Source: Selaginella moellendorffii (taxonomy: Eukaryota; Plantae; Lycopodiophyta). From it: 64,000 nucleotides of DNA. Positions 7,527 to 43,810 of the stretch are shown here, piece after piece. The stretch is taken from positions 221,700 to 285,699 of the forward strand of contig NW_003314282.1 of assembly GCF_000143415.4 (NCBI RefSeq), in the 5' to 3' direction. Position numbers and translations under genes: made by a program. Each line of letters starts with the position of its first letter. Within the stretch, counting starts at the first letter, position 1. The notes beneath the pieces are model-generated. The model made no database searches, was not told the origin of the DNA, and was given only the letters and a program-made list of their open reading frames with translations.

Positions 7527-9602
7527 ATGACGATGCTGGAGAACGCAACCCAATCCAAAACCACTGGAAGAACACACAATGGAGCTTTAGTGCAAGTATC
7601 AACTGACTATTTTGCTCACCTCCTCAAGCAATGTGGGAATTCCAAGGACCCTTCACAGGGGGATCAAGTCTACAGAAAAATCTCCTCGAGTGAATTTGCG
7701 AATGACAGATACCTGGGAAATCTCCTCATCGAGATGTATGGCAAGTGCGGGCAATTGGACAAGGCGCAAGCGGCTTTCGATCGCCTGGATCATCCCAACA
7801 CGTACTCCTGGAACATCATTGTCGCGGCATACGCTCGCAACGGGCAGATCGATCGAGCGAGAGATCTCTTTGACGAGATGCCCTCCAAGGATGTTGTCTC
7901 ATGGAATGCCATGATCGCAGCATATGCCCAAGATGGGGACCTGGAAAAAGCCAAGGCACTGTTTGATAGAACAAAGAAGAAGGATCTCTTTACCTGGAAC
8001 ACGATGATGGCTGCGTATGCTGGAGAAGGGAAGATTTCGGAGGCGCGAGAGATCTTTGATAGGATGGAGCAGCGAGATCTTGTATCCTGGAACACGATGA
8101 TTAACGCTTATTCCCAGAACCGGCATATTGCCGAGGCTAGGAAGATCTTTGACGCGATGAAGCAACGGAACGAGATTTCTTGGAACACGATGATCTTCGC
8201 CTACGCACAGAACGATGATCTAGAAGAAGCCGAGAGATTATTCGAAAGAATGCCTCACCGGGACGCAGTAGCGATGAACGCCATGGTCCAAGCCTATGCC
8301 ATGGCCGGGAGGATCGATCAAGCGCGGCAGATGCTGGAGACGACCCTGGATCGCCTGGATTGGACGATGACCGTGGCCTGGAACGCGCTGATTGCAGCTT
8401 GCGGCGAGCGGCGGGATTCCTTCAGCGCCAGAGCTGTGTTTGATCGAATGCCAGATCGCGATCGAGACGTGGTGTCCTGGAACACGATGATCTCCGTCTA
8501 CACCCAGGCCGAGAATCTGGAAGAATCGAGGAGGATATTCAGAGCGATGCCTCACTGGAATGTGATCTCCTGGAACTCGATGATACTCGCCCTAGCAATC
8601 GAGAGCGCCATAGACGAGGGCGCGGAGCTCTACTCTAAAATGGGCGAGCGCGATGTGGTCACTTGGACGGCCATGATCAAGCTCCTCGGCGAGGCGGGAA
8701 AATTTGAAAACGCGCGGGAGATTTTCGAAGAGATGCCGGAGAGGGATGCGATAGCTTGGAATGCCATGCTCGCGGCATATGCCTTGCACAGGCAAATGGA
8801 AGATTCTAGGGCTTTGTTCTTGGAGATGCCTCACAGGAACGTCATTTCTTGGAACACGATGATCCAGGGTCTCGTCGAGGACGGCCAGGGCGAGGAATCA
8901 ATCAGGCTCTTCCAGCGGATGGATCTTGAAGGCGTCCCGCCTGACGCGATCACGCTCGTCACCATCGCCGATGCGGCCAGCAGTGTTGGATCTCTGGATC
9001 GCTGCAGGACGATCCACGAGAGCTTCCGCGGGTGTGGCGCTGGATCGGAGCTTCCAGTGGCGAATGCGCTCATCAGCATGTATGGCAAGTGTGGATCTCT
9101 GGCCGATGCTCACGTAATCTTCGACAAGATCTCTGGAATCGGCGATGTTGTCTCGTGGAACGCCCTCCTTGCGGCGTATTCCCAGGCGGGACATCACGGC
9201 ACCGCAAGAAATCTCCTGCGATCGATGATCTTGGACGGCGTCGCTCCAAACGGGATCACATTCATCGGGCTCCTCTCAACTTGCAGCCACGCCGGGATGG
9301 TGATCCAGAGCTGCGAGTACTTCGCATCGATGTGGCCGGATCACGGGATAATCCCTGGCAGCGAGCACTACCACTGCATCGTTGACATTCTTGGGAGATC
9401 CGGATGGCTCCAGGAGGCGCTGGACGCGATCGGCAGCATGCCATTTCCTGCCGGGGCCGAGGCGTGGACATCGCTGCTCACGGCGTGTAGCCTACATTCC
9501 AATGCCAAGCTCGGATCTCAAGCTGCTCACAACGCTTCGGAGATGGATTTGGCGAATCCGGCGCCATACATGATGCTCTCGGGGATCCTTACAGCGAGCT
9601 AG
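7527..9602 (+). CDS. PLS-class PPR protein with E domain, no DYW
   Basis: Intronless 691-aa ORF. FDEMPSKDVVSWNAMIAAYAQDG-type repeats, ITFIGLLSTCSHAG, HYHCIVDILGRSG, AWTSLLTACSLH, APYMMLS. Confidence 0.93.
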   Translation: MTMLENATQSKTTGRTHNGALVQVSTDYFAHLLKQCGNSKDPSQGDQVYRKISSSEFANDRYLGNLLIEMYGKCGQLDKAQAAFDRLDHPNTYSWNIIVAAYARNGQIDRARDLFDEMPSKDVVSWNAMIAAYAQDGDLEKAKALFDRTKKKDLFTWNTMMAAYAGEGKISEAREIFDRMEQRDLVSWNTMINAYSQNRHIAEARKIFDAMKQRNEISWNTMIFAYAQNDDLEEAERLFERMPHRDAVAMNAMVQAYAMAGRIDQARQMLETTLDRLDWTMTVAWNALIAACGERRDSFSARAVFDRMPDRDRDVVSWNTMISVYTQAENLEESRRIFRAMPHWNVISWNSMILALAIESAIDEGAELYSKMGERDVVTWTAMIKLLGEAGKFENAREIFEEMPERDAIAWNAMLAAYALHRQMEDSRALFLEMPHRNVISWNTMIQGLVEDGQGEESIRLFQRMDLEGVPPDAITLVTIADAASSVGSLDRCRTIHESFRGCGAGSELPVANALISMYGKCGSLADAHVIFDKISGIGDVVSWNALLAAYSQAGHHGTARNLLRSMILDGVAPNGITFIGLLSTCSHAGMVIQSCEYFASMWPDHGIIPGSEHYHCIVDILGRSGWLQEALDAIGSMPFPAGAEAWTSLLTACSLHSNAKLGSQAAHNASEMDLANPAPYMMLSGILTAS

Positions 9603-9740
9603 GGTTCTTCGCGAAAAGATCGGACGAACCAGCGGGGCCAGCCGTTGGATCCACATATTCCTTACAGGGTTTATGGTTTAGGGTTTAGCTATATCTTAGG
9701 GCTCGCTTCTCCGAAGGGTTCTTAGCTAGAAAGGGGGAGA

Positions 9741-11757
9741 ATGCGCTTCGCGGGGGTTGCGAGGAGCGCCAGGCACCTCCTGACCAGCAGCCGCTTTCTC
9801 TCCTCTACCACATTTGGCTCGCAGAGCGATGGACTCTTCCAGGGACGCTGCTTCGCCACGACGACCTTGGCACAATCATCGGTTTGGTCTCCATAGATGG
9901 ATTCTATAAGTTCTAACTACACCTGTTTTTATGTAGGCTCCGTCAAAGGTTCTTTTTTTCCGAACACAAGCGGACGAGATCACTCAGGTGTGTGCGCTTG
10001 CGAAAATGTGGGGTTTTCTTAGTGTGGAATTTCTTGCAGGAGGAGCTCACAGATCTTGTGAAACCATTTGGATCGATAAACAAGTTCATTGTGATGAGAT
10101 CAGGGAAAGATGTATGCGTTTTCGTTATTTCTCAGTTCTTTCTAAATCGTCTTGCTGTCGTAGGCACTTCTGGAAATGGGAGACGTAGAGGAAGCAAGGA
10201 GTGTTATCAAGCACTTCTCTGAGGACCAGGCGCTCCTGAGGTACCGCAAGTTCACATTCTGTTTGTTGTCATTTTCAAATGTGTTGCAGGGGGAAGGAAG
10301 TCCAGGTCGAGTATTCCTCGCGCCAGAAGCTGAGCGAACCCGAAAACCCCAAAGTCTGTGTGTCTTCGTCAGCCATACGTTCCTTGCGCTTATGCTTGTT
10401 CGTTTTCTAGGTGGAGGCTTCTCGGGTGCTTCTTGCCATCATTCATAATCCGCTCTATCAAATGAACGTAGATATACTCCACCAAGTTTTCAGCCCTCAT
10501 GGCAATATCGAGAAGATTGTCATCTTCCACAAGGCTGGTCAGTATCTTTTACCAATGGCATAGCTATTTAACAAGCCTCTTCGGTAGCAGCTGTTCAGGC
10601 ATTTATTGTCTTCGATTCCGATGAAGCTGCTGCAGCGGCCAAGTCAGCCCTCCAGGGACGCCAGATCTTCGATGGCTGCTGCAAATTGGATATTAAGTTC
10701 TCGATGTAAGTTATTTGTCTTGTCTTTCATGTCTGGTTTGATCCTTATCGTTTGCGTTTGTTGAGCAGTAATCAAAATGTTAGAGTCATAGCCAACAATG
10801 AGCTTACCAGGCAAGTTTCTGAGTTTTGCATTTCGCTTTCTTGGAAATTATAAGGAACCGGTTAAAATGAACAGGGACTACACAAATAATTCTTTGCCAG
10901 GGGATTCACAGAGCAAAACCTCTCCGCAGGCTTCGATCTTGGGTGCCGGCACTGCGTTTTCTACGATGAAGCAAGGTGGTTTTGGTGGGGTTAAACGAAG
11001 TCTTCAACTTCCTCTTGTTTTTTCCTTTCGAAATTTCAGGCTCGGTCCCGTTGTCGGGAGTTCTTCCATTTGGGGTCACTGGAAGTAATGACAAGTGTAC
11101 TCTCCTTGTTTCAAATCTACACGAGGTACTTGTGTGTTTTTTTTATACGGTATGGCTGTACAAGAGTGTCTTTTTCTCGCAGAGAACAGACGAAGAGAAA
11201 CTCTTCAACCTCTTCTCTGGATATGGAAGAGTGCTGCGGATTAAGATGTTTGAAAATGCGAAGCAAGCCTTGGTTCAGCTGGCAGACGGGGTCCAAGCAG
11301 AGCTTGCTTTGAACTTTCTAAAGGTAAACCTTGTTACTTGCTTTTCTGTCTCTCTGACTGGGAGTTTAAACTACAGGGAGCACCGCTGCTTGGAAGCGCG
11401 ATGGAGATCTCCTTCTCGAAGCACAACACCATCAGACACCCTCGTACTCGCGACTTCACAATGGACCCCTACAACAGATTCAACAGCGAGTACGTCAAGA
11501 ACTGCTGCCCGCCCTCGAAGATCCTCCACATCTCCAACGTGAGCGACGAGGTGGAGGAAGGCGACCTCTTAAACTTCCTGGCACCCCACGGCGTCATCCA
11601 GAGGGTGAAGCTCTTCGAGTCCACCAACAGGAGGCAAGCTCTGGTAGAATTCGACACGATCGAGCAGGCGACCGAGGCTCTCGCCTCCAAGCACAGGTCC
11701 AAACTCAAAGCTACCTCGCTCCGGATCGCCTTCTCGAGGTACCATGCAATTCGATGA
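9741..11757 (+). CDS. Polypyrimidine tract-binding protein 3 / hnRNP L-like, four RRMs, multi-exon, with a 47-aa N-terminal extension
   Basis: Spliced reading: APSKVLFFR...EELTDLVKPFGSINKFIVMR...EYSSRQKL; SRVLLAIIHNPLYQMNVDILHQVFSPHGNIEKIVIF...LQGRQIFDGCCKLDIKFS; GVTGSNDKCTLLVSNL; YNRFNSEYVKNCCPPSKILHISN...LRIAFS. These follow plant PTB3 RRM1-4 in order. Confidence 0.88.
10811..10874 (+). other. GC-AG intron in the PTB-like gene
   Basis: ACCAG|gcaagt...gaacag|GGACTAC restores conserved NNELTRDYTN. Confidence 0.75.
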
Positions 11758-12753
11758 TCGTGTAGCAGCGGTGATACTTCGATCACTAGAACAACACTAA
11801 GAAGAAGTAAGGATTAGCGAGCTCCAGTCTTCCTCTTGTCTTTGTTTGCTCTCTCGATTTTTCTTCTCCGTGTTCTTAACTTTTTAATGTGTAGCAGCTG
11901 CGATTCTCACCTAGAAATCTGCGCAGTAGCAGCAGCAGTAGCAGCAGCAATGAATCGAGCGCAAAAAAAAGCTCACGAGGAACGGCAAAAATAGTTGTTG
12001 GCCGGTCTGCCTCGATTTCGCGTTGACATGAAAACATAGTTAACAAAAAACACCATGGCTGGATCTAACGGTCCAGATTCGCACCGATCGGACAGCCCAG
12101 ATTGAATGTCTCGTTCCCGGCATTAATTCCGAGTGACATGTCGTGTACATTCTCCCTCTGCCAGCGTTTAGGGCTCTCGCTCGATCGATGCGCCCGAGTG
12201 GAAGTGGACGATTGGCGTGGGCCGCGGTGTTGCCGCGATCAATCGCTGTGGATTGTACTGGATGGAACGAGAAAGAGGAAAAAAGATGCCCTTCTCTCGG
12301 AAAAGAGGAACGTTTTGTTTGCTAGCAGCTAGTGCGTCCCTGATTTTCAACATTGGCCTCGCTTTTCTCTTTCCTTGGAAGCCGATCGAGAAGCCCATGT
12401 AACGGATTCCAGCTCCGATCGCACTCCGATCCACCGAATTTCTTTCCCTCCAAAGCAAAGCAGGGGGGATTAGAGAATTAGGGTTCTTGGCCGAGAGCAT
12501 TTAATGGATGGCGATTGGGTGAAAGGCGATGGATTTATTTCTGTGCGCTTACCAAACTCTGGCTGGAGAACACCAACTGACCCCCTTTCGGCCTATACAT
12601 TTTAAACAAAATCACAGCATCGATCGCGCCCTCTTTGTTCCTGGGCTGTTCTTTTCCGGTTTCTTCATCAAATCCCCTCTTTTTCCTCCGTGGATTCCAT
12701 CACTGCCACCTCAAAGGTTTGCGCGGCTTTGCCTAGCGCCTAGCCTAGCGGCC

Positions 12754-12756
<3 letters not shown>

Positions 12757-12789
<33 letters not shown>
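12757..12789. repeat. (GA)n microsatellite upstream of the ABCB gene
   Basis: Direct read of about 16 GA units. Confidence 0.95.
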
Positions 12790-29928: not shown

Positions 29929-30801
29929 ATGGTTCTAAAGAATTATCTGGTGTTTTTCTATTTTTACATAAATATAGCATGTGGAACAAATATAGATTGG
30001 GGAGTAAAAGGAGCTCTTAGTGAACAAGATATTCAAACTATAATTGATCGTGGTTTTTTTAATTTAACAAAGAAAGTAAAATTTAATGTTAGCTATCCAG
30101 AAAATTATAAAGATGCAAGAATGGTTGATGTTAGCAAAGGTGCAGTTTTTGTAAGGATTGAACGCTTAGGAAAAAATTGTAAATCTGGAAAATCAACAAC
30201 AAAACAAATACTTGGTACCTGAATAAGAGATGGTTTAAAATATACAATAAATGAATATAAATCAATATTATTATCACAACGAGCAGATAAATGTAAAATA
30301 ACATTAACAAATCATATAATTGAGTATAGTCTCCAGTTTTTGTGGAGTCCTCAAAATTTATTTCCATTTTCTTATAAATATATTTATCCCACTGAAAAAG
30401 ATTGTGATACAAGTTTAACCACTTTAAATGCTGGTTTTAAAGATTTCCGTTTATTAAAAGGCAACTTTATAGTATCATCTAATGGTAGAAATGTATTATA
30501 CTTAAAATCAAATTGCCAGCTTGTATTTTTTTCAGGTAGAAATCGTTTATGGCAATCTGAAAATATTTTATTTTTTGAAGGTAATTGTGAACTTATTTTG
30601 CAAACTGATGGAAATCTTGTTATATATACTGAAATAAACCAAGTGTTATGGTCTATTACAAAATACTGTGACAAATGCATTTTTCTTACATATCTTACCA
30701 TTGAAGATGACTGTAGCTTTATAATATATGAAGCTGTAGCACCAAACAATATTTGGTGGGGAAAAAGTTTTAAAAATCATATAGGCTGCTTCAAGGATTG
30801 A
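29929..30801 (+). pseudogene. Intronless AT-rich secreted protein: signal peptide + unknown ~130-aa domain + bulb-type (GNA-like) lectin domain; single in-frame TGA at 30220-30222
   Basis: ORFs 29929-30222 and 30340-30801 are in the same frame, and the linker reads open after the TGA (GT*IRDGLKYTINEYK...YSLQFLWSPQ). Lectin motif LILQTDGNLVIY...VLWS (QxDxNxVxY). Confidence 0.75.
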
Positions 30802-31399
30802 ATCTCTTAATATAAAATTTATTTTATTTCTAAATTACTTATGAATTCTAATTCCAATTCTAGCTAATTTCTAGAGTGCCACTACCACCTGTCTTAGTCC
30901 TAATCTAATATGCCTATATAAATTAAAAAACATCAAATAGCATAGAAGTAGTATATAAGAAATGTTTGGGGTGCATAAAATATGTAGAGGCAACACATTA
31001 TTTCAACCTATTTACTGCTAACATACAGTCAAGATCACTCCATGTAATTGTTTAGAATGGCTATTGCATATCTTCAAATTTAAAAATTGTAGTTTCATAC
31101 AAATTACACTCATTCCAAAGGCCACCTGAGAGAGGAGAAAAATGATGCTCTCTCTTATAAGGCATTTTAGGATGTCCAAGTAAGCTGAAAAAAATAAAGA
31201 AAAAATCATGAGCAAAAGGAGGAAAAATAGAAGAATGCATACCTATTGAAACCATAGAGGAAAGTGATCAAAGATGGAGAAGCTTAATAAAAAGAATTAC
31301 TTAAATTAGTACAAGTCAATCCCTTCATATATAGCATCAACTAAACATATTTCACATGATTCACTATAGAAAATGCACTCATTCAAAACCAAATTTAAT

Positions 31400-31620
31400 T
31401 ACAGTGTATGTGATCATGTGAGATTTGTTTATACTATCATTATAGATCCTTGGAACTTTGGGGGATAAATGGAGATAAAATAGCTATTAAGGGCTCTTTC
31501 ATAAAATAATTGGCCCTTTTCCAATTGGTTTAAGGGGAGAACATTATATGTGGTATCAAAGGAAAAAAACAAAAATTAAATTTCTATTAATTATTAGCTA
31601 TTTATAATCAGGAGCAGGAT
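31400..31620 (+). mobile_element. Older degenerate copy of the TRIM LTR + PBS, inverted relative to the intact TRIM
   Basis: Reverse-complement match to the 32925-33086 LTR (gatccttggaac...ggggataaatgg.gataaaata...attaagggctct...ttttccaattgg), followed by TGGTATCAAA at 31551-31560. Confidence 0.75.
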
Positions 31621-31949
31621 ATATTTCAATATGTCAAGGTATCTAAATTCTAAATAAACTACTAAATTTTCTTTTAAGATTCATATATCTTTATGTTATA
31701 AGTCTCTTTAAGTTTGATCATCCTAAAGAGCCTGGGTAGGTTTTGAGCTCATGAGCTCATGACTTCTCAAATACAAGGAAAACATTCATTCATCCTGAAC
31801 TAACATCTTTTCATTTTTCAAATTTTGATTTAATCTATATTTCCAAGTAAATTTGACCAATAAAATACAAATATAAATATAGATCCGAACACTAAAAGCA
31901 ATCTAGAAACACTTCTTAAGCTCTACAATTGTAAGGTTTGCCTAGTGGA

Positions 31950-32310
31950 TGTAAATGGTCAATCTTAGGATGGTCAATCTTGGTTTAGTTCTTGGATAAA
32001 AATATAATAGATGTGCTTGTAGGATAAATATACCTTTCCTTTGTTCTTCTTCTATGTAAAATCTGAACAGCTATAAGATGGATTTTCACAGATTCTGATA
32101 GTGTAGTTCATACCCTTTAACAACTCAGTCACAACAACAAACTCTTTAGCTATGGCACTGATGTAATCTATCCTTGTGATTGTGCACTTCAACACCTTTG
32201 CCAACTTAATCTTCTTTTGTGCACCTTTTGAAATAGAAGACTTATATTATAAACCTTCCTATTTCTAATTAGTGTTGTATGCCGGTTTAGTGTTGACATT
32301 GGTGGTATAG
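31950..32310 (-). pseudogene. SWIM zinc-finger remnant (3' part of the MULE-like transposase)
   Basis: YTIRICENPSYSCSDFT*...YLSYKHIYYIF. Reverting two G>A changes (TAT>TGT, TAC>TGC) gives CxC...CKH. Confidence 0.6.
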
Positions 32311-32319
32311 CAATATCAA

Positions 32320-33086
32320 TGTAACGCACCCTATCTCTTTCTCCTTAAGCCAATTGGAAAAGGGGTAATTGCTTAATGAGAGAGCCCTTAGTGGTTATTT
32401 TATCCCCATTTATCCCCCAATGTTCCAAGGATCCAATTGGAAAAGAGGCAATTACTTAATGAAAGAGCCTTTAGTGGTTATTTTATCCCCATTTATCCCC
32501 TAAGGTTCCAAGGATCCATAGTGGTAGTATATCCAAATCTCATCCCATGATCACATACACTATACTTACCCCCCCCTTTAAAGATGTCAATGTCCTCATT
32601 GACTATTGACTAATAACCCCTACTAAACTAAGGGGAATCAACACTTCCATTTCCGCATTGAATCTATCAATCTTTCCATTGTGTAGGTCAGTTATTCCAT
32701 GTGAGGCAACTAGTCATTCACCCGTACCTCAATCCCATGGTGGATACCTTTGTATGTGGATACTCCACACAAGAGAAAAGACATACATATGGATGCTCGA
32801 TATGTACGATTTCAAATTTAGGGGTAGGAATATACCTTGCTCAAGGGTATATTATATTTTTAAGTAGCCACTAATCAATGAAAATCGATGAGAATCAAGC
32901 CACGCCATTTGCTCTGATACCACATATAACGCACCCTATCTCTCTCCCCTTAAGCCAACTGAAAAAGGGGCAATTGCTTAATAAGAGAGCCCTTAATGGT
33001 TATTTTATCCCCATTTATCCCCCAAGGTTCCAAGGATCCACGGTGACAGTATATTCAAATCTCATCCCATGATCACATGCGCTACA
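32320..33086 (-). mobile_element. Complete TRIM (terminal-repeat retrotransposon in miniature)
   Basis: LTRs 32925-33086 (162 bp) and 32320-32564 (245 bp, with an internal ~82-bp duplication). tRNA-iMet PBS TGGTATCAGAGC at 32911-32922 (-). Polypurine tract at 32565-32579 (-). Flanks ATCAA/ATTAA form a 5-bp TSD with one mismatch. Non-coding interior. Confidence 0.88.
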
Positions 33087-33350
33087 ATTAATAGTAATAT
33101 TTGAGGAAGTCTTCAGCTTGAAACCAGCTTGTAAGCCACAAATTTTTCCTTTCCAATTTGCCAGCTTACCTCATCTATCCGTCCAACATTGCCTTGGCTT
33201 TTGCTAAGTTCCCTCGCCAAGGTTCCCACTTATGGTACTAGCTCCTACTTGGTCCTACTTGGTTTCAGCTATTCACTACACGAGCAACGAAGCATTATCC
33301 ATCCATCCACGGATTCCCAAGTCTCTCCCAATCCCCCTCCCCGGGTTGAT

Positions 33351-33450
33351 NNNNNNNNNNNNNNNNNNNNNNNNNNNNNNNNNNNNNNNNNNNNNNNNNN
33401 NNNNNNNNNNNNNNNNNNNNNNNNNNNNNNNNNNNNNNNNNNNNNNNNNN
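33351..33450. other. Assembly gap (100 N)
   Basis: Run of N. Confidence 0.99.
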
Positions 33451-33555
33451 TCACAATTTTTACTAAACTTTGGGAACCCCCTGTAGCCCCCCCCCCCCCC
33501 CCCCCCCCCTAGGAGACACACGCTTTGGGCTTTCACCCCTTGACCCGTATTAGTA

Positions 33556-33790
33556 CTCGGACTCGATCTCGGACCCGACTTTGGACTCGGTCTCGGACTC
33601 GATCTCGGACCCGATCTCGGACTCGACTTCAGACTCGACCTCGGACTTGGTCTCGGACCCGATTTGGATCTTGGACTCTATCTCAAACTCGGTCTCGAAC
33701 TTGGTCTCCGATTCGGCCTCAGACTCGATTCCGGACTCTATCTCGAACTCGGTCCTAGAGACAGTCTTGGACTCGATTTTCGACTCGGTC
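33556..33790. repeat. Degenerate hexamer array (CTCGGA/CTCGAT/CTCGGT)n
   Basis: Direct read. It produces spurious RSRT/DSIS/ESE ORFs. Confidence 0.9.
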
Positions 33791-33899
33791 CCATCCAATG
33801 AACTCTTTGTCATTTTGGTCATGCTTTCGGGGATCCTTTAGCCTACGACACCTTGGTGAGTTGGTTCCTTACACATCTCTCTCTAGACTTTCAATCTCT

Positions 33900-36870
33900 T
33901 TTACCACTCCTTTGGCACAGAATCTAGCTTTGAGATAATTGAGTTGTGGATCCAATTTGTACGAGTAACATTAGTCCTAGAACAATAATCCAGCTTGACT
34001 AGTGGCCCTTTACCCCTAAATCTCGACAGCCCCAGAAACATGGTACTGTTGAAGAACTTGAACTTGAGCACACAAATGCAAGACACTGACCTTGACTCCC
34101 AATCATTCCAGAGCAACGTGCATTACTCTTGGTACTGACTCTTTGAATTGCCCAATTGATATGAGAAATTGGCTCACGAGCAATAATCTTCTTAACCTCT
34201 GGCACTTGATTTACTTGTGTAACAACTGGCACTTCCTCCACTCCATATTCCTTAGTTCTTCTCCAGTGTCATGGAATAGGATGGTAGTTAAACTCTGGAC
34301 AATGAGAGCTAAAAGGAGTGATGTTAAGCCCATCAAATGTCTGTTGACACTTCATACAAGTTATCCTTATATCCCCAAGTGGTTTATAATTTGATTCCAT
34401 ATGAGTTCCAGTAACAACTTCCTCCACCATTTTAGACATTGACCCTGCTATTAGTGTTGTCCTTTTACCAACTCACTCTCGAAGCTTATCTAAGTTTAGA
34501 CTTGTACCAGCAAACCTTGCTTCTTGTGCAGCCAAAGCTTTTGATAATTGCTCAAAAGATCTAGTGAGGTCGGAGAGTATAACTTCATAGAGGGACATTT
34601 TTCCTTTCCCTTCTTCGAAAGCTCTCCAACTCTAATGTTTGCTCTTAGGGAGATTAATTGTTAGTGTAAGTGCAATGTCATCAAGTTGTTGATCCTAGGA
34701 AAAATACAACATTTGAATGTGACAAGCAAAGAAAATGAGAGAAAACTTATATGAAGAATATAATGGCCCCACTAAAACATTTAAACTTCCCACTATGCAA
34801 GCCAACATTCCATTTGTGGAAGGTGTTCAATTGGCATTTTGTCTCCTTCACGCCACTATATGCACATCTCATTTGCTTTTGCATCGTGCTCCTCTTTAAT
34901 TGGTGCATCCATCCAGTCCCGACAAAGTTGCTTAAACTCGTGATGGAAGTTAGAATTGATGCATCGGCAATGTTTGTTAACACTCTTTGCCCAATGAAAC
35001 TCACAACTTTTATCTCTACTTTATAATGGCTGACTTTTATCACCTCCAAATACTTGTCGTACAGCCAACTAGTTAGCACCAACAGCATCTGCCATGAAAT
35101 CGTGGAAGTTGGGTTTCTTCCTGATTCACTATTCAACAACCTTGAATATACATGTCCAAACGATGGTTTGAGTTTAGAAATCTTAAACCTTGAATTTAGC
35201 TATACCTATAGTCAAGTTGCACTACAACCTATAGAAGGACTGGTTATAATGTCCATTGGTATGAGATCCTTAAAAAATGAAAAGGCACTTACTTGTGATC
35301 CNNNNNNNNNNNNNNNNNNNNNNNNNNNNNNNNNNNNNNNNNNNNNNNNNNNNNNNNNNNNNNNNNNNNNNNNNNNNNNNNNNNNNNNNNNNNNNNNNNN
35401 NTATACTTGTGATCATAAACATGGGCTCCCATTATTGACCAACCTAAAACTCATTCTATGTCATCAAAATGGATCTAAGAATTAGCCAAGTCCCCGTCTC
35501 CATCCGTATCTATTCACTGTACAAGGTCCATCCTAGAAGCAAAACCAAGGCTTGGACATCTTAAAGATGAAAGGGCATTGACTGTCAAAGTCACTTAGCC
35601 AACAAACAAGCTCCCATGAATAAACTCATAGGGACATTTTCTTTTTAACTCCAAAATTACATCCAACCCAAATTGAAGCTTTCCATCTCACCCTTCTTGC
35701 ATCTAATTCTTTATTTTGCAAAATAAAAGTGTTTTTAGTGATAAAGTAGAGTTAAGCATTAACCTTATACCTGTTTAAATCTATTACAGTTCTATATTTT
35801 GAAGTAGGCTCTTCAAGCTGTTCTTCATGAACTCTTTTTTGCTATCAGCTTGTAGCAATGTGTTCACCACATAGTCCTTTAGTACAAACTGTTGAACACA
35901 CTTTGGAATTACAACATTTTTCTTCCCAACCTCTGTAGTAACAGTAGCCTTCAAATTGAGAAAAGAGTCACAATGGATCCCTTCCTCTATTGTGTGTTGG
36001 TGGTATCTAACATGCATTATTGTTCTACCTAAACATCCATCCCGTGGAAGAAAATAATACATTTTTGCATTGCAACATGTTTGACACATAGGTGTTGCCC
36101 CACATTTGCGACATTTAAACCCTGTAGCAACCTCATCACGCCTAAGGGGATTGATTGCTGAGCCTTCAAAGAAACACATATTCTTATTATGATCAGAAAT
36201 GCATTTCTCAGCAACACACTGAAATTGTCCACCATAATGGACTATGGACACAGATTTGTTGAAATGGGAGAAGTGGGTCATCTTTACTCTGCACCAATTA
36301 TGTGGATCAAAATGTGTCTCCATGCCCCTCTTCCTACTTGAAAAACTGGCTGGTGGAAATTCGAAGAATATATTCCCATTATAGGAAGACAGAAGCTTTC
36401 TACCTCTCATGTACTGGAATTCCTTCAATTCCAACCGTAATGATCGAGATTGCCAAAATGCTTTATCCACCGCTTCAAAAACTAGTCCAGAAGGAATGCA
36501 CCTACTTGTTTGGGAAGCTCATCTTCTTCACTTTCATCATTGGAGAGAATAACAAATTCCTCCTTCACTCCTTGCACAATTGGCATTGAAACTGATGCAC
36601 TTTCCTTTACTCACTTTGGAGATCTTGTAATTAAAATCTCCTAACCTGTACGTCTATCAAGATCCCACTGAATTCCATTATCTCCCACACCACTATCGTG
36701 AAGAATAGATTTTTCTATCTGATTACCCTTATCCCGACATACATTCTCAAAACTATTTGATCCCAGCTTCAGCTTGAATCTTCTGCAGAGGAAGCTCCCT
36801 CCTATAACACACTTAGAGAAAATAATAGGAGGCTCTTGATCAAACTTCAAGTAGAATTCCCTCATATTTT
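33900..36870 (-). mobile_element. Decayed Mutator-like (MULE) DDE transposase
   Basis: N-terminal Cys/His zinc domain (DPHNW...QFQC...C...CRKC...MCQTCCNAKMYY...RTIMHVRYHQH). Core FIFKMS...GDLANS*IHFD...GWSIMGAHVYD and PNFHDFMADAVGAN*LAVRQVFG...KSCEFHW (catalytic D's and CxxH motif). Many stops. Confidence 0.72.
35302..35401. other. Assembly gap (100 N)
   Basis: Run of N. Confidence 0.99.
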
Positions 36871-39800
36871 GAGCACTTGAAAAAAAATTGGGGAGAAACT
36901 GACAAGAAAGAACAAAGATATTCTTCTGTATTATGAGCTTAAATTAGTTGTGTCCTTGCAAAGGACAAGTTAATTATTTTAACAAAATATACAACCATTT
37001 AAAATCTAGAGATATATAAGAATCTTAAAGAGCCACCCATATTGATTGTGTAATTGATTATGAGAGGAATAATAATGTTGAAATGAATGGGTTATGAGTG
37101 AGAAGTGCCGATTAATCACAAAAGTTATAGCATTGATTGCTTGTTCTCCCTCTCATCTTTATGTTCTTTTTCCTTCAAAAGAGTTTCATTCTTTTGTGAT
37201 AAGTGAGAGAGAGTTAAACTTGGAAAGGCTGGTTCGTACACAGTTTTTTCATGAGCATGCTTACTTGGTATCATGTGCCTATGGATTTTTTGGTTGTGGT
37301 CTAGGCAAAGGTATCCTTTTCTTTCATGAACTTGAGCAAAACTCATATTTGAAGATTACACAAGTGACAAATGAGGTGCAAAAGAACCTTGAACTACAAC
37401 AAATTGAGCAACTCATTTTGAACTCAAAGAAATCAAAGGTGAAAAATCTACTTGTGATTGTGAACATCCGACGTGATAAAGATTGGCTGGATTGCATTGC
37501 AAAGATATGCTTTTGTGGCAATAAGTTAATCCCTTTTATCTTTCTCATTCCACTTTGAAATCCTTGTCCTTGCAAGAAATGGTAAAGAACCTGAAGAATT
37601 GATCTATAACATCACAAAAAGCAAACTCTCCTTCAACAAACAAACCTCTTGTTTGGAGCTCTTCAACAATTGGCATTGTAACAATAATAAGAGGTTGGAG
37701 AGCAAACTTGAAAATGTGATGAAGGAGAAACTCTATATCACTCAGAATATTCCGGTTGCTGAGAAGCTACTTTAAGCATGGGATACGAAATTCCTTACTA
37801 GTGCCCGCACTGGCATAACACTTCCAGAATATGTTCTAGCTTCCTTGGATGGCTTCTTGATGGCAACTCAAGCTTCATGTATTTCAAGAACCAGTTGGGC
37901 CAACCATTTTTCTCACGTTGCATGGCATATAGGTATATTGCAAGAAATTGACTTGCTTATTTAATCATGGCTCTTCTGTAAGTATTTAAATTATTGCCCA
38001 AGTGCTTTAGTGTACATAACAAGTGTTTTTCTCAAGCTCTTAATTGATGGCATATATGAGCTAGAGTTCCATTGTCCCATTGCGCAGGAGTGAGAACTTT
38101 GTCCATGGTACTTGGAGTTGTGGAGGCAAGTGCCATTGTCACCTTTTGAGCTTGATCTCTACCTCAAGTATCATCCAGGTTTGATGAGTAAAAATTCCTA
38201 GCAATACCTTATGTTTCTACTTTATTGTAGAGGCACTTTTGGAGGGAGTGGAGATGCCTTAGGACAGGGATGAGATACATATTAAGCAAACCAAAGAGGA
38301 ACAAGTGGAGAACCTAGTTGAAAACTCTCCTACCCCATATCATCCTATAGCAATTGTTCATTCCCGAGATCCTACTGCCATTGCTCGTCCCAAAATATCT
38401 TTTAATCCACATGTCCAAGTTCTTGATCTCAGGCTTGTTGGAAAGCCCTCACTAATCTCTTCAACCTTTTTGAAATCTTCAACTCTAAAATCCTCACTAT
38501 ATGTGAGATAATTGCCAAGAACTTCTCAACTCCAAAATCACTTGAACTTCACCAACTTCAATTGCATCTCCCCTCTAGGGCTCTAGCATGCTACTTCACT
38601 TCCTTTTTGAGTTCCTCCAACTCACAAACCACACAAATCTCTAAAAAACAAGAGAAAAATGCACAGTGAGTCAACCTTCTTAGTTGACAGTGGGGCAAAA
38701 GGGTAGATAGGGCATATGAAAGAGCTAGAGTTTGTGATAGAGACAAAAGTTTGAGCTAGAGAGGTTGGGAGATAGCTCTTATCTCCTAACAAGGTATGTC
38801 TTCCTTCACTCTATAAAGGCCTTTTTTTGTTGTTTTGGTTTGTAGATGTACATGAACTTATGCATCTGGAAAGACTTGGGAAGAACTCTTGGTTGAGCTC
38901 ATTTAAATTTAGCATAAAATTTGACATGCAAAGTCTTCAAAGTTAAAAAAATTAATATGTATTGTAGACAATCACAGGCTAAAGGAGTGGCTAAAGACTT
39001 TAGTCAAAATTTCTGCTTATGAATGTAAGTTTATTATCATATACTTCATTTTTCTCAATTACATATATATTACTTTTGCAATGAACAAAACTCCATATGA
39101 CATGATTTACAATATTGCAAAATCAAAGCTTTTATATAAGAAATAAATAGAGACTTTGAAGTTCCTCAATGTTTACTTGATGAACAGAGAGAAAAGATTG
39201 CTAAAAGTATTTGAGAATATGATGAAAGGGCTATCTACATTATGAAGCAAACTAAAGGTGAAAGTGATAAATTTTTGGCACCACATATTGGTGACAATCC
39301 AAATAGTCTTTTCATATTCTTTAACATCCACGTCAATACATTATTGGAAGAGATTGAAGAGGGGTGGTTACTAGAGAAGTTCACAAGCACAATAACTTAT
39401 GATTGTTAATATGGTTAGCTTTATTTTATGCAATATACAACTTACAGGTATAACACAATTTCTAAGATCTTTCCTAAATATATTGACTACAGATATCTTT
39501 AATATAGAGGCATGCCATTTAAGGCACCAATTTTCACTCAACTTGTTGTAAAGGGTGTAAAGGATAGAGAAATGTATATAATAATATTTATAAAATTTCC
39601 AAAAGCATAAAAAATAAATTGCCTTTAAGAGTTAGAGCTCTTAGGGAAGGAGACTTTTACATTAAACCAAGAAAAAATTATTAATGTTAGCAATGATGGC
39701 AATGTTAACAATGATGGAGAGGAAAATGAAGAAACTCTAAATCAAGCTTAAAGTCCACCACCTAACAGCCAAAATTAGGCTTCAATTTCACCATTAGACA

Positions 39801-39995
39801 GTTAGAATTTAGATTAGGTTCCACTAGCACATGATGATGATTGAGAATATCACCTTAATCTCAATAGCTTTTACAAACCAAAGGTGGTAATATATTATAA
39901 ACAACCAAAGGGAATGACTTGAGAAATTATCCATATAAAGGGAAATGACCCATTATTAATAGTGCATTCTCTTTTCCAATTTGTTAAAGGTTTTG

Positions 39996-40051
39996 GAATA
40001 AACATCCTTAAGTTTGAGTACTATTAGGCTGGGTGACTTTCTAGGAAGTCC
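39996..40051 (+). other. Degenerate 5S rRNA internal fragment (A-box/IE/C-box region) inside an LTR-like segment
   Basis: GAGTACTATTAGGCTGGGTGACTTTCTAGGAAGTCC versus plant 5S GAGTAGTACTAGGATGGGTGACCTCCTGGGAAGTCC; differences are mostly C>T/G>A. Confidence 0.65.
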
Positions 40052-40089
40052 AAATTCAAATGTTTACATTTACCTTGTCAAAGGTTTTA

Positions 40090-41926
40090 ATTGATTAATG
40101 TTGATCTAGAATGATTTATCATTCTTCGGGATGGTGAATTCTTTATTCGACGATGATTATACATCTTTTCATTAATAATCTTTTATGATAATTAGTTATT
40201 CTCTTTGATGGTTTTTGACTTTTCACATTGCCACATTATTCTTTGTGATTTTCTCTGGATTGGTCTCTTGGGTTTGAGACATTAATAGAATGTTACTGAC
40301 TTTTGTTTAAGAAACTTAAACCCCTTAGTATGGTTGATTGGCATCTATTTAGATTGGATAGTGCAATAATTAGCATGAACAAGTGTTTGTTAGTCTTACC
40401 ACATTCATTTTGTTCTGTTAATTGTTGGTATAGTTGGTTTTGATAGATTAAATATTATTTCTTTTGGGTGATATATTCATGAATATTTTGCTTGTAAGTC
40501 AATGATATTTTATGTTCTTTTAGTTGTCTGTCGTAAGTTGTTTAGCATATTGTCTATAATCTTTGATAATTAAGTTTTATTATTGAGTTTCTTGATAACA
40601 TACTAGCTACTGAAGTTTTTTGGATGGTGAATCCTATATTCTTTAATTATGATGATCTTGGTGGTTTTTATACTATAATATTAGTTTAGCAAATGTACTT
40701 ACTTAATAATTCATCTAAGATTTATTCATTGATAATTAAGTCTTTAAGATATCATTGTTTATGACTTTGATATTGTCCATCTCTTGATCTTTGGGTTTAT
40801 GTTAGTATAAGTAAACAGACTTCGACACTTCATATGCATAGTAAAATCTCTAGTCATGGAGTAGATTGGTCACATCACCCGCCTCTTTTTCAATATTCTC
40901 CTTATTTCATTTAAAAAAGTATACCTATATAAACAACTCTAACTATCTGTTTATAGTAGTCTATCTAACCTTATTGATGGGTTTGGTTTCGTTGCTTATG
41001 AGGATTGGGACTTCTCGCTTCTCTTTCTATTCCACTTAAAGCAAGGGCTATCATCTTTTATAAGCTGGGTGGCATCCATAGCAACTAGGGTGGCTAACTC
41101 TGTTACTCATTTCCTTGTCAGTAATAGTCGGAAGATATCCGAGTTGGTAGCGCATTTACATTAGACAAAGAGGTTACCTTAACTCATTTAAGTTGATGCA
41201 TTTTTCATAAAGTGTGAATACTATGAATTTTTTTTAGAGTTGTTTTCTTGGCGGTGCTCTAAATTAAAGTATGCATTGACAAAGGTGTTGATTTTCCCGA
41301 AGAAGGGACGAGTGTCACAAATGTGATTGGGGGTATCAAAAGTTATTTGTCAGCTAGTGTTTTCAAATATTCTTTCCTTACTGCCACAACAGCAGAAGGT
41401 TGGTATTGTGGACCTTTTATCAGTCTCTCTTATGCAAGTGGAGTTAATTAGGCATTTCTGAGAGTACTTAAACCAGATGAGCATAAGGATGGAATTCCTA
41501 CATATTATTAATTAAGCATATTTAACCTAATAAAGAGTTCCCATTTTATTGTGTCTTGCACTAGCTAGTGACAAGAACCCCGCAATATTGAGCTTGGTCT
41601 GTCAATATTTGCAAGATGATAGTTTATCGTATCTACTAAATACCCTTGCTATCATGCACCTTATGTTAGTTACCTTCGGTCCCAATTGCTATTTATGAAA
41701 AGTGTTTAAATTTACTAATTTGGCATATCTACGGAATATAGAGATTGTTTTGACACAATGGTATTAGTCCTACGTCTAAATTTGCAATCTAACACCATTC
41801 CATATTTAGTAAGTTTTGAGTTAGCCTTAAAGACTAACTCCTTGTACTAAGGGTGAAAGCCAAAAGTGTGAGTTCCTTAAAGGCAGGGGAGCGATGGGGG
41901 GTTCCAAATGTATAGTAGGGATAGTG
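40090..41926 (+). mobile_element. Highly decayed LINE (L1-like ORF2: RT through C-terminal region) with 3' stem-loop tail
   Basis: Remnant motifs in the expected order: SxGxDGEFF, DWHL(I) (WRPI-like), G*YIHE-ILL (GRxIxDN-like), YDD (YADD-like), KLGGI, LLIWHI-TE (WxIWxERN-like). Heavily mutated. Confidence 0.5.
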
Positions 41927-42892
41927 GGTAAATTGGGCATAGCTAACCAACTTGAGGTATAGTCTAATTCCTGTTTGCATACCTGCCCTTGTTTTGTGTC
42001 TAACTTGAGTCTAAGCCTAAGTTATGTTAACTTATGGAGTACCCATATTCTCACGTTAAGCCACCAATATGCTGAAATAGCATTAAACTCTGTTTAGCTC
42101 CATTTTGCATGTTAGGCTTGGCATTGGGATGCTGAATGTTCTAGAACTGCTCCAAATCACTCCGTACTTCTATCCCTTCACTCTTTAGGCTATACACTTA
42201 AGAGTTACTCCGTGCTCTAGCACCTTCACTCTTTAGCTTCATGTTTAGGAATTTAGCTTTGTCCCTTCATTCAATGGTCCAAGGCCCTGAAACTCAGGTT
42301 CCGCTCCATTGTTCTTGGACACGTAGCATGTGACACATGGCATATAGAGGGTTTAGGTTGCTTCGTTAGTAAATTATCATAGGATAAAAGGTGTAAACCA
42401 CATGCACTACAAAAGCCCTACGAGAGTGAGCAAGGGTTGGGGGAAAAGGAATTGAGACTTTGAGTTAAAGATATTAGTGTAAGTGATTAATTTTTCCATT
42501 CTACTTTAGTCACTTAACCGCATCTCTGACCACTTGGAGGAGTTTCATTCACAACCTCCATAAGTCCCATTCAGGACTTGGGGCTTGCTAGCCCCGAGAA
42601 TGATATCCATGCCACTCAACCTTTGCACTTGATCCAAGTGCTCCACATGTCCGATCCCATAACTGACACCCCAAGGTACCATTGACATATGAACCCGTTA
42701 CACTAGGCCACACTCATTCACCTTTTGTCACATCGGTGGTCTAACACCACCTGCATTGCAATCCCATCTCTCCAAGACTAGGCCATTTGTCCACGAGTGG
42801 TTATCCCAAATCCACTCTTTAGCATCCTTAAGATGCCTGTGGACATAGGGAATAACCTTCCTTAATATCTCTATTCCGGTCCTCACCAAGTC

Positions 42893-43142
42893 CCTTTCTG
42901 TCCTTGGTTGTGTTCACCAGCACTGCCACTGGATCAAGGCCCATGGGCCTGACCACTAAGTCCCACTGTCCTCTAAGACTTCCTCACTATGTGACTGTGT
43001 CCTTGGTCACTATACTACCTTTCTGTCCTTGGCTGTGTTCACCAACACTGCCACTGGATCAAGGCCCACGGGCCTGACCACTAAGTCCCACTGTCCTCTA
43101 GGACTTCCTCACCATGTGACTGTGTCCTTGGTCACCACACTA
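42893..43142. repeat. Two-copy 125-bp tandem duplication
   Basis: cctttctgtccttgg.tgtgttcacca.cactgccactggatcaaggccca.gggcctgaccactaagtccc... starts at 42893 and again at 43018. Confidence 0.92.
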
Positions 43143-43597
43143 GAGGGCTACTCCCCTTCCTTTCCATAGACTGGGACTTTGGAACAACATTTTGGAACAC
43201 CATGGCCCTACACAAGCCTCATGGGTACTCTCTCTGCCTTCCACCTTTAGGTGCTTTAGCCATGGCTTAGAGCGAGGTTCCATTGAGCCACACCAAGTAT
43301 CCAAGTAGGTAGTGCCACCCACACTTGGACTGGGAGCATCGGCCAGTCGATCTCCCGAGGGAACTAGAGCCGGCCCTTGAACACTTCACCAAGCTACCCC
43401 ATTTGTCAGTCCGTATTCACTTTAGCCTTGGACTTCCCAGTGGTTATCCCATCACCCAGCATCTGGGCACAACCTTCCTGGGCCAAACTAGCCTTTCCTA
43501 GCTGAATTGGCTCCACTAGAGTCCTCCCCCTCACTATACTATACACTAAACCCCCTAGGGTCTAGGAGACAAATGCTTTGGGCTTTCACCCTCTCAG

Positions 43598-43810
43598 ACT
43601 CAAACTCAAACTCAAACTTGGACTCGGACTCGGACTCGGACTCGGGTTGGGGCTCGGTCTCGGCCTCGGCCTTGGTTTCGATCTCAGTCCCAGTCTCGGT
43701 CTCGGTCCCGGTCTTGGTCTCGGTCCCGGTCTCGGTCTTGATCTCGACTTCAGACTCCATCTCGGGTCCTTCTCGGACTCTATCTTAGGTCCATCTCGAA
43801 CTCCATCTCA
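43598..43810. repeat. Degenerate hexamer array (CTCAAA/CTCGGA/CTCGGT)n
   Basis: Direct read. Same unit family as 33556-33790. Confidence 0.9.

What the first reader, a model, noticed from the sequence alone, without database searches (positions are those of the whole stretch)
9741..9990. PTB3/hnRNP L-like protein that appears to have gained a mitochondrial presequence exon
Seen: an extra first exon (9741-9881) splices in phase 0 onto the start of RRM1 (APSKVL). It encodes MRFAGVARSARHLLTSSRFLSSTTFGSQSDGLFQGRCFATTTLAQSS, which is Arg/Ser/Thr/Ala-rich, has one acidic residue and carries an R-x-F|A-T site. Established: plant PTB3 proteins start at 'xPSKV' and are nucleo-cytoplasmic; R-x-[F/Y/L]|[S/A] is the R-3 mitochondrial processing motif. 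The RRMs are also diverged (KVLFFRTQ in place of KVIHVRNV). Inference: a nuclear splicing-factor paralogue retargeted to mitochondria, plausibly acting in organellar RNA editing or splicing in a lineage with extreme C-to-U editing. I know of no described organellar PTB.
Basis: partly seen in the sequence, partly recalled or inferred. Interest (0 to 1): 0.75.

Follow-up and report, generated by a model that had tools for sequence, protein, structure and literature searches.

The report
Spikemoss PTB protein with import-signal-like head
A spikemoss (Selaginella moellendorffii) copy of the RNA-binding splicing regulator PTB3 is really expressed with an extra first exon whose 47 residues look like a mitochondrial import signal. 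It is one of three such diverged copies in this genome, but the gene is already annotated and nobody has tested where the protein goes.

Summary
A 12-exon gene (9741-11757, +) encodes a 465-aa four-RRM protein. RNA contigs from four runs (four studies) show all 11 splice junctions, including 9881|9937, which joins the 47-aa exon 1 in phase 0 to the start of RRM1. The product is identical to RefSeq XP_024534018.1, named 'polypyrimidine tract-binding protein homolog 3', so the gene model is not new.

The extension is unstructured. It has net charge +4, its first acidic residue is at position 30, and Arg sits at 2, 8, 11 and 18. It carries two full RX(F/Y/L)(S/A)(S/T) cleavage motifs.

New here:
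- S. moellendorffii has three diverged PTB3-type paralogues: this one, XP_024521602 and a 479-aa one.
- All three have basic N-terminal extensions, and they form one clade (96/99) with two shared sequence signatures.
- A canonical 'MTEPSKV' PTB3 lies on the same scaffold.
- No orthologue from another species turned up in four searches.
- Coding variants (11 synonymous, 3 not) suggest constraint.

Mitochondrial (or dual) targeting is the best reading, at about 0.55-0.6, but it is inferred. No localisation predictor or experiment was available, and the RNA targets are unknown. I found no paper describing an organellar PTB. Verdict: a new variant of a known kind, of moderate interest.

The parts
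9741..9881 (+). Exon 1: the start codon plus a 47-aa N-terminal extension that is presequence-like. It has R2/R8/R11/R18/R36 and a single acidic residue (D30), with motifs RFL|SS at 18-22 and RCF|AT at 36-40.
   Evidence: Sequence and ORF. Junction seen in RNA contigs of 4 runs. Composition and motif statistics. AlphaFold2 gives pLDDT below 40 and no secondary structure for residues 1-46. No Pfam hit.
9882..9936 (+). Intron 1 (55 nt, GT..AG, phase 0). It separates the extension from the first residue of the PTB family core.
   Evidence: The joint 9880/9936 (cut +1) is present in all four runs laid. The TIGR01649 model's position 1 aligns to residue 49.
9937..10353 (+). Exons 2-5 (9937-9987, 10040-10111, 10164-10240, 10290-10353): RRM1, the most diverged of the four RRMs (H54F, N57T, N87K, Q88D and others).
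   Evidence: Gene model, junctions, conservation count 14/24, AlphaFold2 strands and helices at 52-122, matches to PDB PTB1 RRM1 structures.
10411..10810 (+). Exons 6-8 (10411-10537, 10591-10705, 10769-10810): RRM2 (Pfam RRM_8). Intron 6 has a NAGNAG acceptor and the RNA uses the distal site. Intron 8, which follows, is GC-AG.
10875..11323 (+). Exons 9-11 (10875-10975, 11040-11125, 11183-11323): a short RRM2-RRM3 linker carrying the clade-specific SILGA motif, then RRM3.
11377..11757 (+). Exon 12: the end of RRM3, the RRM3-4 linker (which lacks the canonical Y-R/K-Y before CCxP), RRM4, and the stop codon at 11755-11757.
   Evidence: PDB PTB1 RRM3-4 (2adc) matches at E = 9e-29.
11758..12050 (+). 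3' UTR, approximate. RNA contigs end between 11771 and 12050.
   Evidence: table 8.
9603..9740 (+). A 138-nt spacer between the stop of the upstream PPR gene and the ATG. It presumably holds the promoter and 5' UTR. It contains a telomere-repeat-like GGGTTTATGGTTTAGGGTTTAG (9667-9688) and a 2-codon uORF at 9673. The transcription start is not defined.
   Evidence: Contigs carrying exon 1 run on unspliced into the PPR gene.

Best explanation
This is an expressed paralogue of the plant splicing regulator PTB3 that is under purifying selection. It has four RRMs and its reading frame begins in a separate first exon encoding a 47-residue, unstructured, basic, hydroxyl-rich peptide. The most likely mechanism is as follows. 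The peptide acts as a cleavable organellar targeting signal, most probably a mitochondrial presequence. The precursor is imported and cut by the processing peptidase after F38 (RCF|AT) or L20 (RFL|SS). The mature four-RRM protein then binds pyrimidine-rich stretches of organellar transcripts as an RNA chaperone, stabiliser or splicing helper.

The gene belongs to a trio of diverged PTB3-type genes in S. moellendorffii that all carry basic N-terminal extensions, alongside a canonical 'MTEPSKV' PTB3. This pattern suggests duplication followed by relocation of one lineage.

Shown: splicing, the ORF, the domain architecture, clade membership and signs of constraint. Inferred: import, the cleavage site, which organelle, and the RNA targets.
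For: - All 11 junctions, including 9881|9937, appear in RNA contigs of 4 runs from 4 studies.
- The only in-frame ATG upstream of RRM1 is at 9741, with a stop at 9723.
- The product is identical to XP_024534018.1.
- The extension has net charge +4, no acidic residue before D30, four Arg in the first 18 residues and 15 Ser/Thr. It has two full RX(F/Y/L)(S/A)(S/T) motifs; only 0.34% of composition-preserving shuffles have two or more. The motif, a mean presequence length of 50 aa and a mean charge of +3.4 for Arabidopsis mitochondrial N-termini (against +1.0 for plastid ones) are from PMC6048449.
- Among about 100 family members with an N-terminal extension of 15 aa or more, this is the only long one (over 40 aa) that is nearly acid-free and Ser/Thr-rich. 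Animal and protist extensions are acidic and KR-rich, the NLS type.
- AlphaFold2 leaves residues 1-46 unstructured and folds four RRMs at pLDDT 85-95.
- The sister paralogues P0015 (MHQAASRRLLARSADLFFSRRY...) and P0003 (MLRPRRCYHRF...) also have basic extensions.
- The three form a clade at 96/99 support with two exclusive signatures.
- A canonical copy is retained.
- 11 synonymous against 3 non-synonymous variants.
Against: - No localisation predictor, proteomic data or import assay could be consulted.
- The amphipathic-helix moment of the N-terminus is not significantly above shuffles (p = 0.14).
- The order Ser > Thr > Arg and the uncharged Ser/Thr-rich second half (residues 21-47) also resemble a plastid transit peptide.
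- The extensions of paralogues C and D lack the full cleavage motif, and C's is short (about 18-25 aa).
- No orthologue in another species is available to test whether the extension is conserved.
- The transcription start is undefined, because contigs run on into the upstream PPR gene.
Confidence: 0.58

Rival explanations
1. The extension is a plastid transit peptide or an ambiguous (dual) targeting peptide, so the protein works in chloroplasts, or in both organelles, rather than in mitochondria alone.
For: The composition order Ser(9) > Thr(6) > Arg(5) and the uncharged Ser/Thr-rich stretch at 21-47 resemble transit peptides. S > T > R is the pattern reported for Arabidopsis plastid N-termini (PMC6048449). 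The amphipathic moment is not significant. Selaginella plastids are also hyper-edited (PMC4174432, listed).
Against: The first 20 residues carry net +4, with Arg at 2, 8, 11 and 18, against a reported mean of +1.0 for plastid N-termini. There are two full mitochondrial processing motifs. The peptide does not start with the usual uncharged 'MA...' head.
Confidence: 0.2
2. The extension is not a targeting signal. The protein stays nucleo-cytoplasmic like other PTBs, and the disordered N-terminal tail serves another purpose (regulation, interaction, a weak basic NLS) or is nearly neutral. The fast evolution of the trio would then reflect relaxed or altered nuclear function.
For: Arabidopsis PTB1-3 are nuclear and also seen in P-bodies (PMC4030149). 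Animal PTBs have N-terminal extensions that are not organellar. Localisation is untested. The extensions of C and D are less convincing. The TIGR01649 score sits just below the cut-off (283.9 against 287.4), which shows general divergence.
Against: The tail has no K/R cluster typical of an NLS and no lysine at all, unlike the acidic, KR-rich extensions of non-plant PTBs. Three independently diverging paralogues all keep a basic, acid-poor N-terminal head. Two cleavage motifs occur, at a rate seen in 0.3% of shuffles.
Confidence: 0.19
3. Exon 1 is an annotation or assembly artefact, or belongs to read-through transcripts of the upstream PPR gene, and is not translated into a functional protein.
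For: Every contig that carries exon 1 continues unspliced upstream into the PPR gene. The spacer is only 138 nt, and there is a small uORF at 9673.
Against: The junction is seen in 4 runs from 4 studies with GT..AG ends. Without exon 1 there is no start codon for an intact RRM1, since the next Met is M83. The ATG has A at -3 and G at +4. The gene shows 11 synonymous against 3 non-synonymous variants, and the extension has a synonymous SNP only. RefSeq predicts the same product on both haplotypes.
Confidence: 0.03

Closest known systems
Plant PTB3 (Arabidopsis PTB3/At1g43190 type; canonical S. moellendorffii copy P0156/P0152)
   Same: It has the same four-RRM order (RRM_5, RRM_1 and RRM_8 hits). 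It lies inside the streptophyte PTB3 clade (99/99). It is 44-48% identical over the core. It matches PTB1 RRM3-4 structures best.
   Different: It has a 47-aa basic, Ser/Thr-rich exon-1 extension in place of 'M-T/A-E'. It has a short RRM2-3 linker with SILGA. It has lost Y-R/K-Y in the RRM3-4 linker. RRM1 is diverged (14 of 24 conserved positions kept). It has a long branch (0.92 against 0.27). Its TIGR01649 score of 283.9 falls below the 287.4 cut-off, whereas the canonical copy scores 407.5. Arabidopsis PTBs are nuclear and seen in P-bodies (PMC4030149).
Sister paralogues in S. moellendorffii: XP_024521602.1 (P0003, 434 aa) and 'PTB3 isoform X1' (P0015, 479 aa)
   Same: They fall in the same clade (96/99) and share the same two signatures. 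They have N-terminal basic extensions before the PSKV/PCKV start and are 37-41% identical to this protein.
   Different: The extensions cannot be aligned and lack the full RX(F/Y/L)(S/A)(S/T) motif. C's is only about 25 aa. They lie on another scaffold.
Human GRSF1 (a qRRM protein of the hnRNP F/H family that works in mitochondria)
   Same: It sets a conceptual precedent: a member of a nuclear hnRNP-type multi-RRM family that carries a mitochondrial targeting function and acts on mitochondrial RNA (PMC6028389 and PMC10624831).
   Different: It belongs to an unrelated RRM subfamily, is from animals, and binds G-rich RNA. Its localisation is shown experimentally, whereas here it is only inferred.
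Plant organellar RRM proteins (ORRM editing co-factors, chloroplast cpRNPs, Chlamydomonas RB47/cPABP) - recalled from general knowledge, not tested here
   Same: These are eukaryote-type RRM proteins with N-terminal targeting peptides that act on organellar RNA.
   Different: They have one or two canonical RRMs, or are PABP-type. None is PTB-type. No homology beyond the RRM fold was examined.

Membership tests
PTB / hnRNP L family (NCBIfam TIGR01649), plant PTB3 branch | Four RRMs in the PTB arrangement | tested here: met
   Pfam hits RRM_5, RRM_1, RRM_8 and RRM_occluded. AlphaFold2 gives four beta-alpha-beta-beta-alpha-beta folds at pLDDT 85-95. PDB hits to PTB1 RRM1, RRM2 and RRM3-4.
PTB / hnRNP L family (NCBIfam TIGR01649), plant PTB3 branch | Whole-protein score above the curated family cut-off | tested here: not met
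   283.9 bits against a cut-off of 287.4, a narrow miss. The canonical S. moellendorffii copy scores 407.5, and paralogues C and D score 266.7 and 211.9.
PTB / hnRNP L family (NCBIfam TIGR01649), plant PTB3 branch | Phylogenetic placement within streptophyte PTB3 rather than hnRNP L or animal PTBP | tested here: met
   The careful ML tree places it inside the streptophyte PTB3 clade at 99/99. An AU test does not reject a single S. moellendorffii clade (p = 0.53). The PTB1 RRM3-4 match (E = 9e-29) is far better than the hnRNP L RRM3-4 match (4e-8).
PTB / hnRNP L family (NCBIfam TIGR01649), plant PTB3 branch | Protein begins directly at M-x-E-PSKV | tested here: not met
   47 extra residues precede APSKV. 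177 of 387 fetched relatives start at the motif.
Plant mitochondrial matrix precursor (cleavable presequence) | N-terminal stretch of roughly 20-60+ aa that is net positive and nearly free of acidic residues | tested here: met
   47 aa, 5 Arg, 1 Asp (position 30), net +4. The first 20 residues carry net +4. Reference values are from PMC6048449.
Plant mitochondrial matrix precursor (cleavable presequence) | Processing motif RX(F/Y/L)|(S/A)(S/T) | tested here: met
   RFLSS at 18-22 and RCFAT at 36-40. Two or more occur in 0.34% of shuffles and one or more in 10%.
Plant mitochondrial matrix precursor (cleavable presequence) | Amphipathic helix potential | tested here: inconclusive
   The maximum hydrophobic moment is 0.47 (18-mer) and 0.66 (11-mer) at residues 3-18. 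This is not above composition-matched shuffles (p = 0.14). AlphaFold2 predicts no helix there.
Plant mitochondrial matrix precursor (cleavable presequence) | Demonstrated import and cleavage, or a trained predictor score | not testable with these tools
   TargetP, MitoFates, proteomics and import assays were not available.
Chloroplast transit peptide | Uncharged N-terminal head, Ser/Thr-rich, low net charge (about +1) | tested here: inconclusive
   Ser/Thr richness is met (15 of 47). Low charge and an uncharged head are not met: Arg sits at 2, 8 and 11, and net charge is +4 (with reference values).

The most novel reading that the evidence does not exclude
The spikemoss lineage, with its intron-richest and most heavily C-to-U-edited organelle transcriptomes, has recruited a whole sub-family (three genes) of PTB-type pyrimidine-tract binders into its organelles. 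There they would act as general helpers for group II intron splicing, editing or stabilisation of C/U-rich precursor RNAs. That would be a class of organellar RNA factor not known in any other plant.
Probability: 0.25. Interest if true: 0.8.

Novelty: new variant of a known kind. Interest (0 to 1): 0.55.

Why it matters
PTB proteins are textbook nuclear and cytoplasmic regulators of alternative splicing. I found no paper describing an organellar one.

S. moellendorffii mitochondria hold 37 introns in 20 genes and 2,139 C-to-U editing sites (PMC5654404). The set of helper proteins beyond PPRs in lycophytes is poorly known.

If this trio of PTB-derived proteins is imported, two things follow. 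It would be a clean example of a nuclear RNA-binding family relocated by gaining an N-terminal exon. It would also give concrete candidates for organellar RNA-processing helpers in a hyper-editing lineage.

The idea is directly testable with GFP fusions and RNA immunoprecipitation.

If the tail is not a targeting signal, the finding reduces to a fast-evolving, lineage-specific PTB3 expansion of modest interest.

Tried and rejected
1. Fetching the loci of the canonical and sister paralogues, to compare intron positions and decide whether exon 1 was 'gained'. The look-up of encoding contigs had none of P0015, P0003, P0156, P0152 or P0233 on record, so this stays open.
2. Looking for a second PTB copy in this window. 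tblastn finds only this gene.
3. Orthologues in other species. Four searches found none: an exhaustive HMMER search with exon 12, word-index searches with B and D, and a B/C/D profile search. The word-index searches scored only the 8,000 best candidates, and the profile search even missed P0003, so absence is weakly supported. Other Selaginella species may simply not be in the collection.
4. A protein-atlas search with residues 1-47. It gave only meaningless matches to bacterial proteins.
5. Amphipathicity as a discriminator. It was not significant.
6. Telo-box enrichment. There are 4 matches in the window against 1.5 expected, which is not significant.
7. The bacterial promoter/terminator scan of the spacer does not apply to this genome and was empty.
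8. hnRNP L identity is rejected. The tree and the PDB matches favour the PTB type.
9. A minor joint 9884>10159 in one run (depth 7, non-canonical ends, 4 inserted letters) was treated as an artefact.
10. Huang et al. 2009 (PMC2705053) is not held in the library, so the motif is cited through PMC6048449.
Full report
**What is there.** The region lies in a compact, short-intron plant genome. Protein matches identify it as Selaginella moellendorffii. From the sequence I built a 12-exon model on the + strand, 9741-11757, with introns of 49-64 nt. Exon 1 runs from the ATG at 9741 to 9881 (141 nt, 47 codons). An in-frame TAG lies at 9723, so the frame cannot start further upstream. Intron 1 (9882-9936) is GT..AG. 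Exon 2 begins at 9937 with APSKVLFFRTQ, which is the first strand of RRM1.

**RNA evidence.** Twenty public runs from nine studies hold about half of the 31-mers of 9500-12000, which is the share expected for spliced RNA. I laid the contigs of four runs, from four studies and three organism labels, on 9400-12100. All eleven junctions appear in every run, including 9881|9937 with GT..AG ends. The contigs corrected two details:
- Intron 6 uses the distal CAG of a NAGNAG acceptor, so exon 7 starts at 10591.
- Intron 8 (10811-10874) is a GC-AG intron.

The corrected product is 465 aa. It is identical, letter for letter, to RefSeq XP_024534018.1, 'polypyrimidine tract-binding protein homolog 3 [Selaginella moellendorffii]'. 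The other haplotype is XP_024537269.1. An older partial model (SELMODRAFT_99329, P0001) lacks exons 1-2 and is mis-spliced.

So the gene, with its extension, is already annotated. What has not been remarked is what the extension looks like.

One caveat concerns the 5' end. Every contig carrying exon 1 continues unspliced upstream across the 138-nt spacer into the 3' part of a co-oriented PPR gene (7527-9602). The transcription start is therefore not defined. Contigs cannot tell overlapping transcripts from read-through.

**The extension must be translated.** Exon 2 has no ATG, and the next in-frame Met is M83, inside RRM1. Any protein with an intact RRM1 must therefore start at 9741. The start has A at -3 and G at +4. 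A 2-codon uORF (ATG GTT TAG) lies at 9673, if that part is transcribed.

**What the protein is.**
- Pfam finds RRM_5, RRM_1 and RRM_8 across residues 49-460 and nothing in 1-47.
- The NCBIfam model for the hnRNP-L/PTB family (TIGR01649) aligns from its position 1 to residue 49. It scores 283.9 bits, just under the curated 287.4; the canonical S. moellendorffii PTB3 scores 407.5.
- The best solved relatives are human PTB1 and PTB2 RRM3-4 (E about 1e-28). hnRNP L RRM3-4 matches far worse (4e-8).
- AlphaFold2, run with a 42-sequence alignment, folds four RRMs at pLDDT 85-95. It leaves residues 1-46 at pLDDT below 40 with no secondary structure.
- Against positions conserved in at least 90% of 38 other family members, the protein keeps 14/24 in RRM1, 25/38 in RRM2, 22/27 in RRM3 and 12/13 in RRM4. 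RRM1 is thus clearly the most altered, with H54F, N57T, N87K and Q88D among the changes.
- Fourteen coding variants appear in the RNA contigs. Eleven are synonymous and three are not. The only variant in exon 1 is synonymous. The gene therefore looks constrained.

Searches returned four PTB3-type genes in S. moellendorffii:
- A, the canonical copy (P0156/P0152, 'MTEPSKVLHVRNV...'), on the same 2.1 Mb scaffold but not in this window.
- B, this gene.
- C, XP_024521602.1 (434 aa), which starts MLRPRRCYHRFACGAYPREPELPNPSPCKVLH.
- D, a 479-aa protein that starts MHQAASRRLLARSADLFFSRRYCASPAAG... and reaches EPSKVLHF at about residue 47.

In a careful ML tree of 42 sequences, B, C and D form one clade (ultrafast bootstrap 96, SH-aLRT 99) inside the streptophyte PTB3 clade (99/99). 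All three sit on long branches. An AU test does not reject a tree that holds all four S. moellendorffii genes together (p = 0.53). An origin by duplication within the lycophyte or spikemoss lineage is therefore compatible with the data.

Because long branches can attract one another, I looked for signatures that do not depend on the tree. Two are found only in B, C and D (and their haplotype or old-model copies) among the 314 family proteins fetched by then:
- The Y-R/K-Y triplet before CCxP in the RRM3-4 linker is lost.
- A short RRM2-3 linker contains SILGA.

No orthologue from another species was found. The searches were an exhaustive HMMER search of 1.84 billion representatives with exon 12, word-index searches with B and with D, and a profile of B+C+D. 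The clubmoss Diphasiastrum shows only canonical copies. This absence is weak evidence. The word searches were truncated to 8,000 candidates, and other Selaginella species may not be represented.

**Does the extension look like a mitochondrial presequence?**

For:
- It is 47 aa long; the reported mean for Arabidopsis presequences is 50.
- It has 5 Arg, no Lys and one Asp (position 30), for net charge +4. The first 20 residues also carry net +4. The reported means are +3.4 for mitochondrial and +1.0 for plastid N-termini (PMC6048449).
- It is rich in hydroxylated residues (15 Ser/Thr).
- It has two complete copies of the plant and yeast processing motif RX(F/Y/L)(S/A)(S/T), also quoted in PMC6048449: RFLSS at 18-22 and RCFAT at 36-40. 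Only 0.34% of composition-preserving shuffles have two or more copies, and 10% have one or more.
- Among roughly 100 PTB-family proteins with an N-terminal extension of 15 aa or more, this is the only long one that is nearly acid-free and Ser/Thr-rich. The extensions of animal and protist PTBs are acidic and KR-rich, i.e. NLS-like.
- The extensions of C and D are also basic and acid-poor at the very N-terminus (first-20 net charge +4 and +3). They cannot be aligned with B's, which is typical of targeting peptides.

Against, or open:
- The hydrophobic moment of the N-terminal segment is not above shuffles (p = 0.14).
- The order S > T > R and the uncharged second half would also suit a plastid or dual-targeting peptide.
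- C and D lack the full cleavage motif.
- I had no trained predictor and no proteomic or imaging data.

**Mechanism proposed.**

Shown:
- The mRNA is spliced and encodes extension plus four RRMs.
- The protein is a diverged PTB3-type paralogue under constraint.

Inferred:
- The extension directs import into mitochondria. I put this at about 0.55-0.6, plastid or dual targeting at about 0.2, and no targeting at about 0.2.
- The processing peptidase cuts after F38 or L20.
- The mature protein binds pyrimidine-rich organellar RNA.

The link to editing or splicing is speculation. It rests on the biology of the host: S. moellendorffii mitochondria have 37 introns in 20 genes and 2,139 C-to-U sites (PMC5654404).

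**Comparison with what is known.** Arabidopsis PTB1-3 act in nuclear alternative splicing and are also seen in P-bodies (PMC4030149). Full-text searches that combined PTB with Selaginella, with transit peptides, and with plant mitochondrial targeting found no paper on an organellar PTB. The principle does have precedents. Human GRSF1 is an hnRNP F/H-family qRRM protein that works in mitochondria (PMC6028389). From general knowledge, plant ORRM and cpRNP proteins and Chlamydomonas RB47 are further cases. I therefore rate this a new variant of a known kind: a PTB-type member of the class 'nuclear RBP family relocated to organelles', provided localisation holds.

**Whether an exon was 'gained'.** The layout is the classic signature of presequence acquisition. 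The extension is a separate phase-0 exon that ends one residue before the family core. However, the loci of the canonical copy and of C and D could not be retrieved. I therefore cannot say whether the intron is new, or whether the gain preceded the duplications.

**Earlier scan notes.** One note gave the species name, which I confirmed through the protein hits. Another describes a different S. moellendorffii gene that borrows a presequence from a neighbour. That is context only and was not tested here.

**Verdict.**
The presequence-like exon is real and translated, the canonical copy exists, and the family context strengthens the idea.
- Organellar localisation and function remain untested.
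- The gene model itself is already public.
- Interest: 0.55.

Noticed in passing
window 7527-9602 (+): An intronless 691-aa PPR protein gene (Pfam PPR E = 3e-114, 11+ repeats) ends only 138 nt upstream of the PTB-like ATG, on the same strand. RNA contigs run continuously from it into PTB exon 1, so the two transcripts overlap or are read through.
   Followed up: partly
window 9667-9688: A telomere-repeat-like sequence, GGGTTTATGGTTTAGGGTTTAG (telo-box type), sits in the short spacer or 5' UTR just before the ATG. TAGGGTTT occurs 4 times in the window against 1.5 expected, which is not significant.
   Followed up: partly
window 10585-10590 and 10811-10874: Intron 6 has a NAGNAG tandem acceptor (TAGCAG). 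The RNA contigs use the distal CAG, while the old EFJ model used the proximal one. Intron 8 is a GC-AG intron (AG|GCAAGT).
   Followed up: yes
window 9853-10027: One low-depth contig in run X13 retains introns 1 and 2 and carries 8 mismatches. It could be unspliced pre-mRNA of the other haplotype or contaminating DNA.
   Followed up: no
window 11919-11954 and 12757-12789: There is a (GCA)n-like trinucleotide repeat in the 3' UTR and a (GA)n microsatellite about 1 kb downstream of the gene.
   Followed up: no
window 30001-46000: A long AT-rich stretch (GC 0.29-0.41, against 0.45-0.56 elsewhere) with strong local GC-skew swings. It may be rich in repeats or transposons. I did not examine it.
   Followed up: no
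P0015 and P0003 (S. moellendorffii, scaffold of 396,342 bp): The two sister paralogues with N-terminal extensions are recorded on one and the same scaffold and may be neighbours. Their loci could not be fetched.
   Followed up: partly
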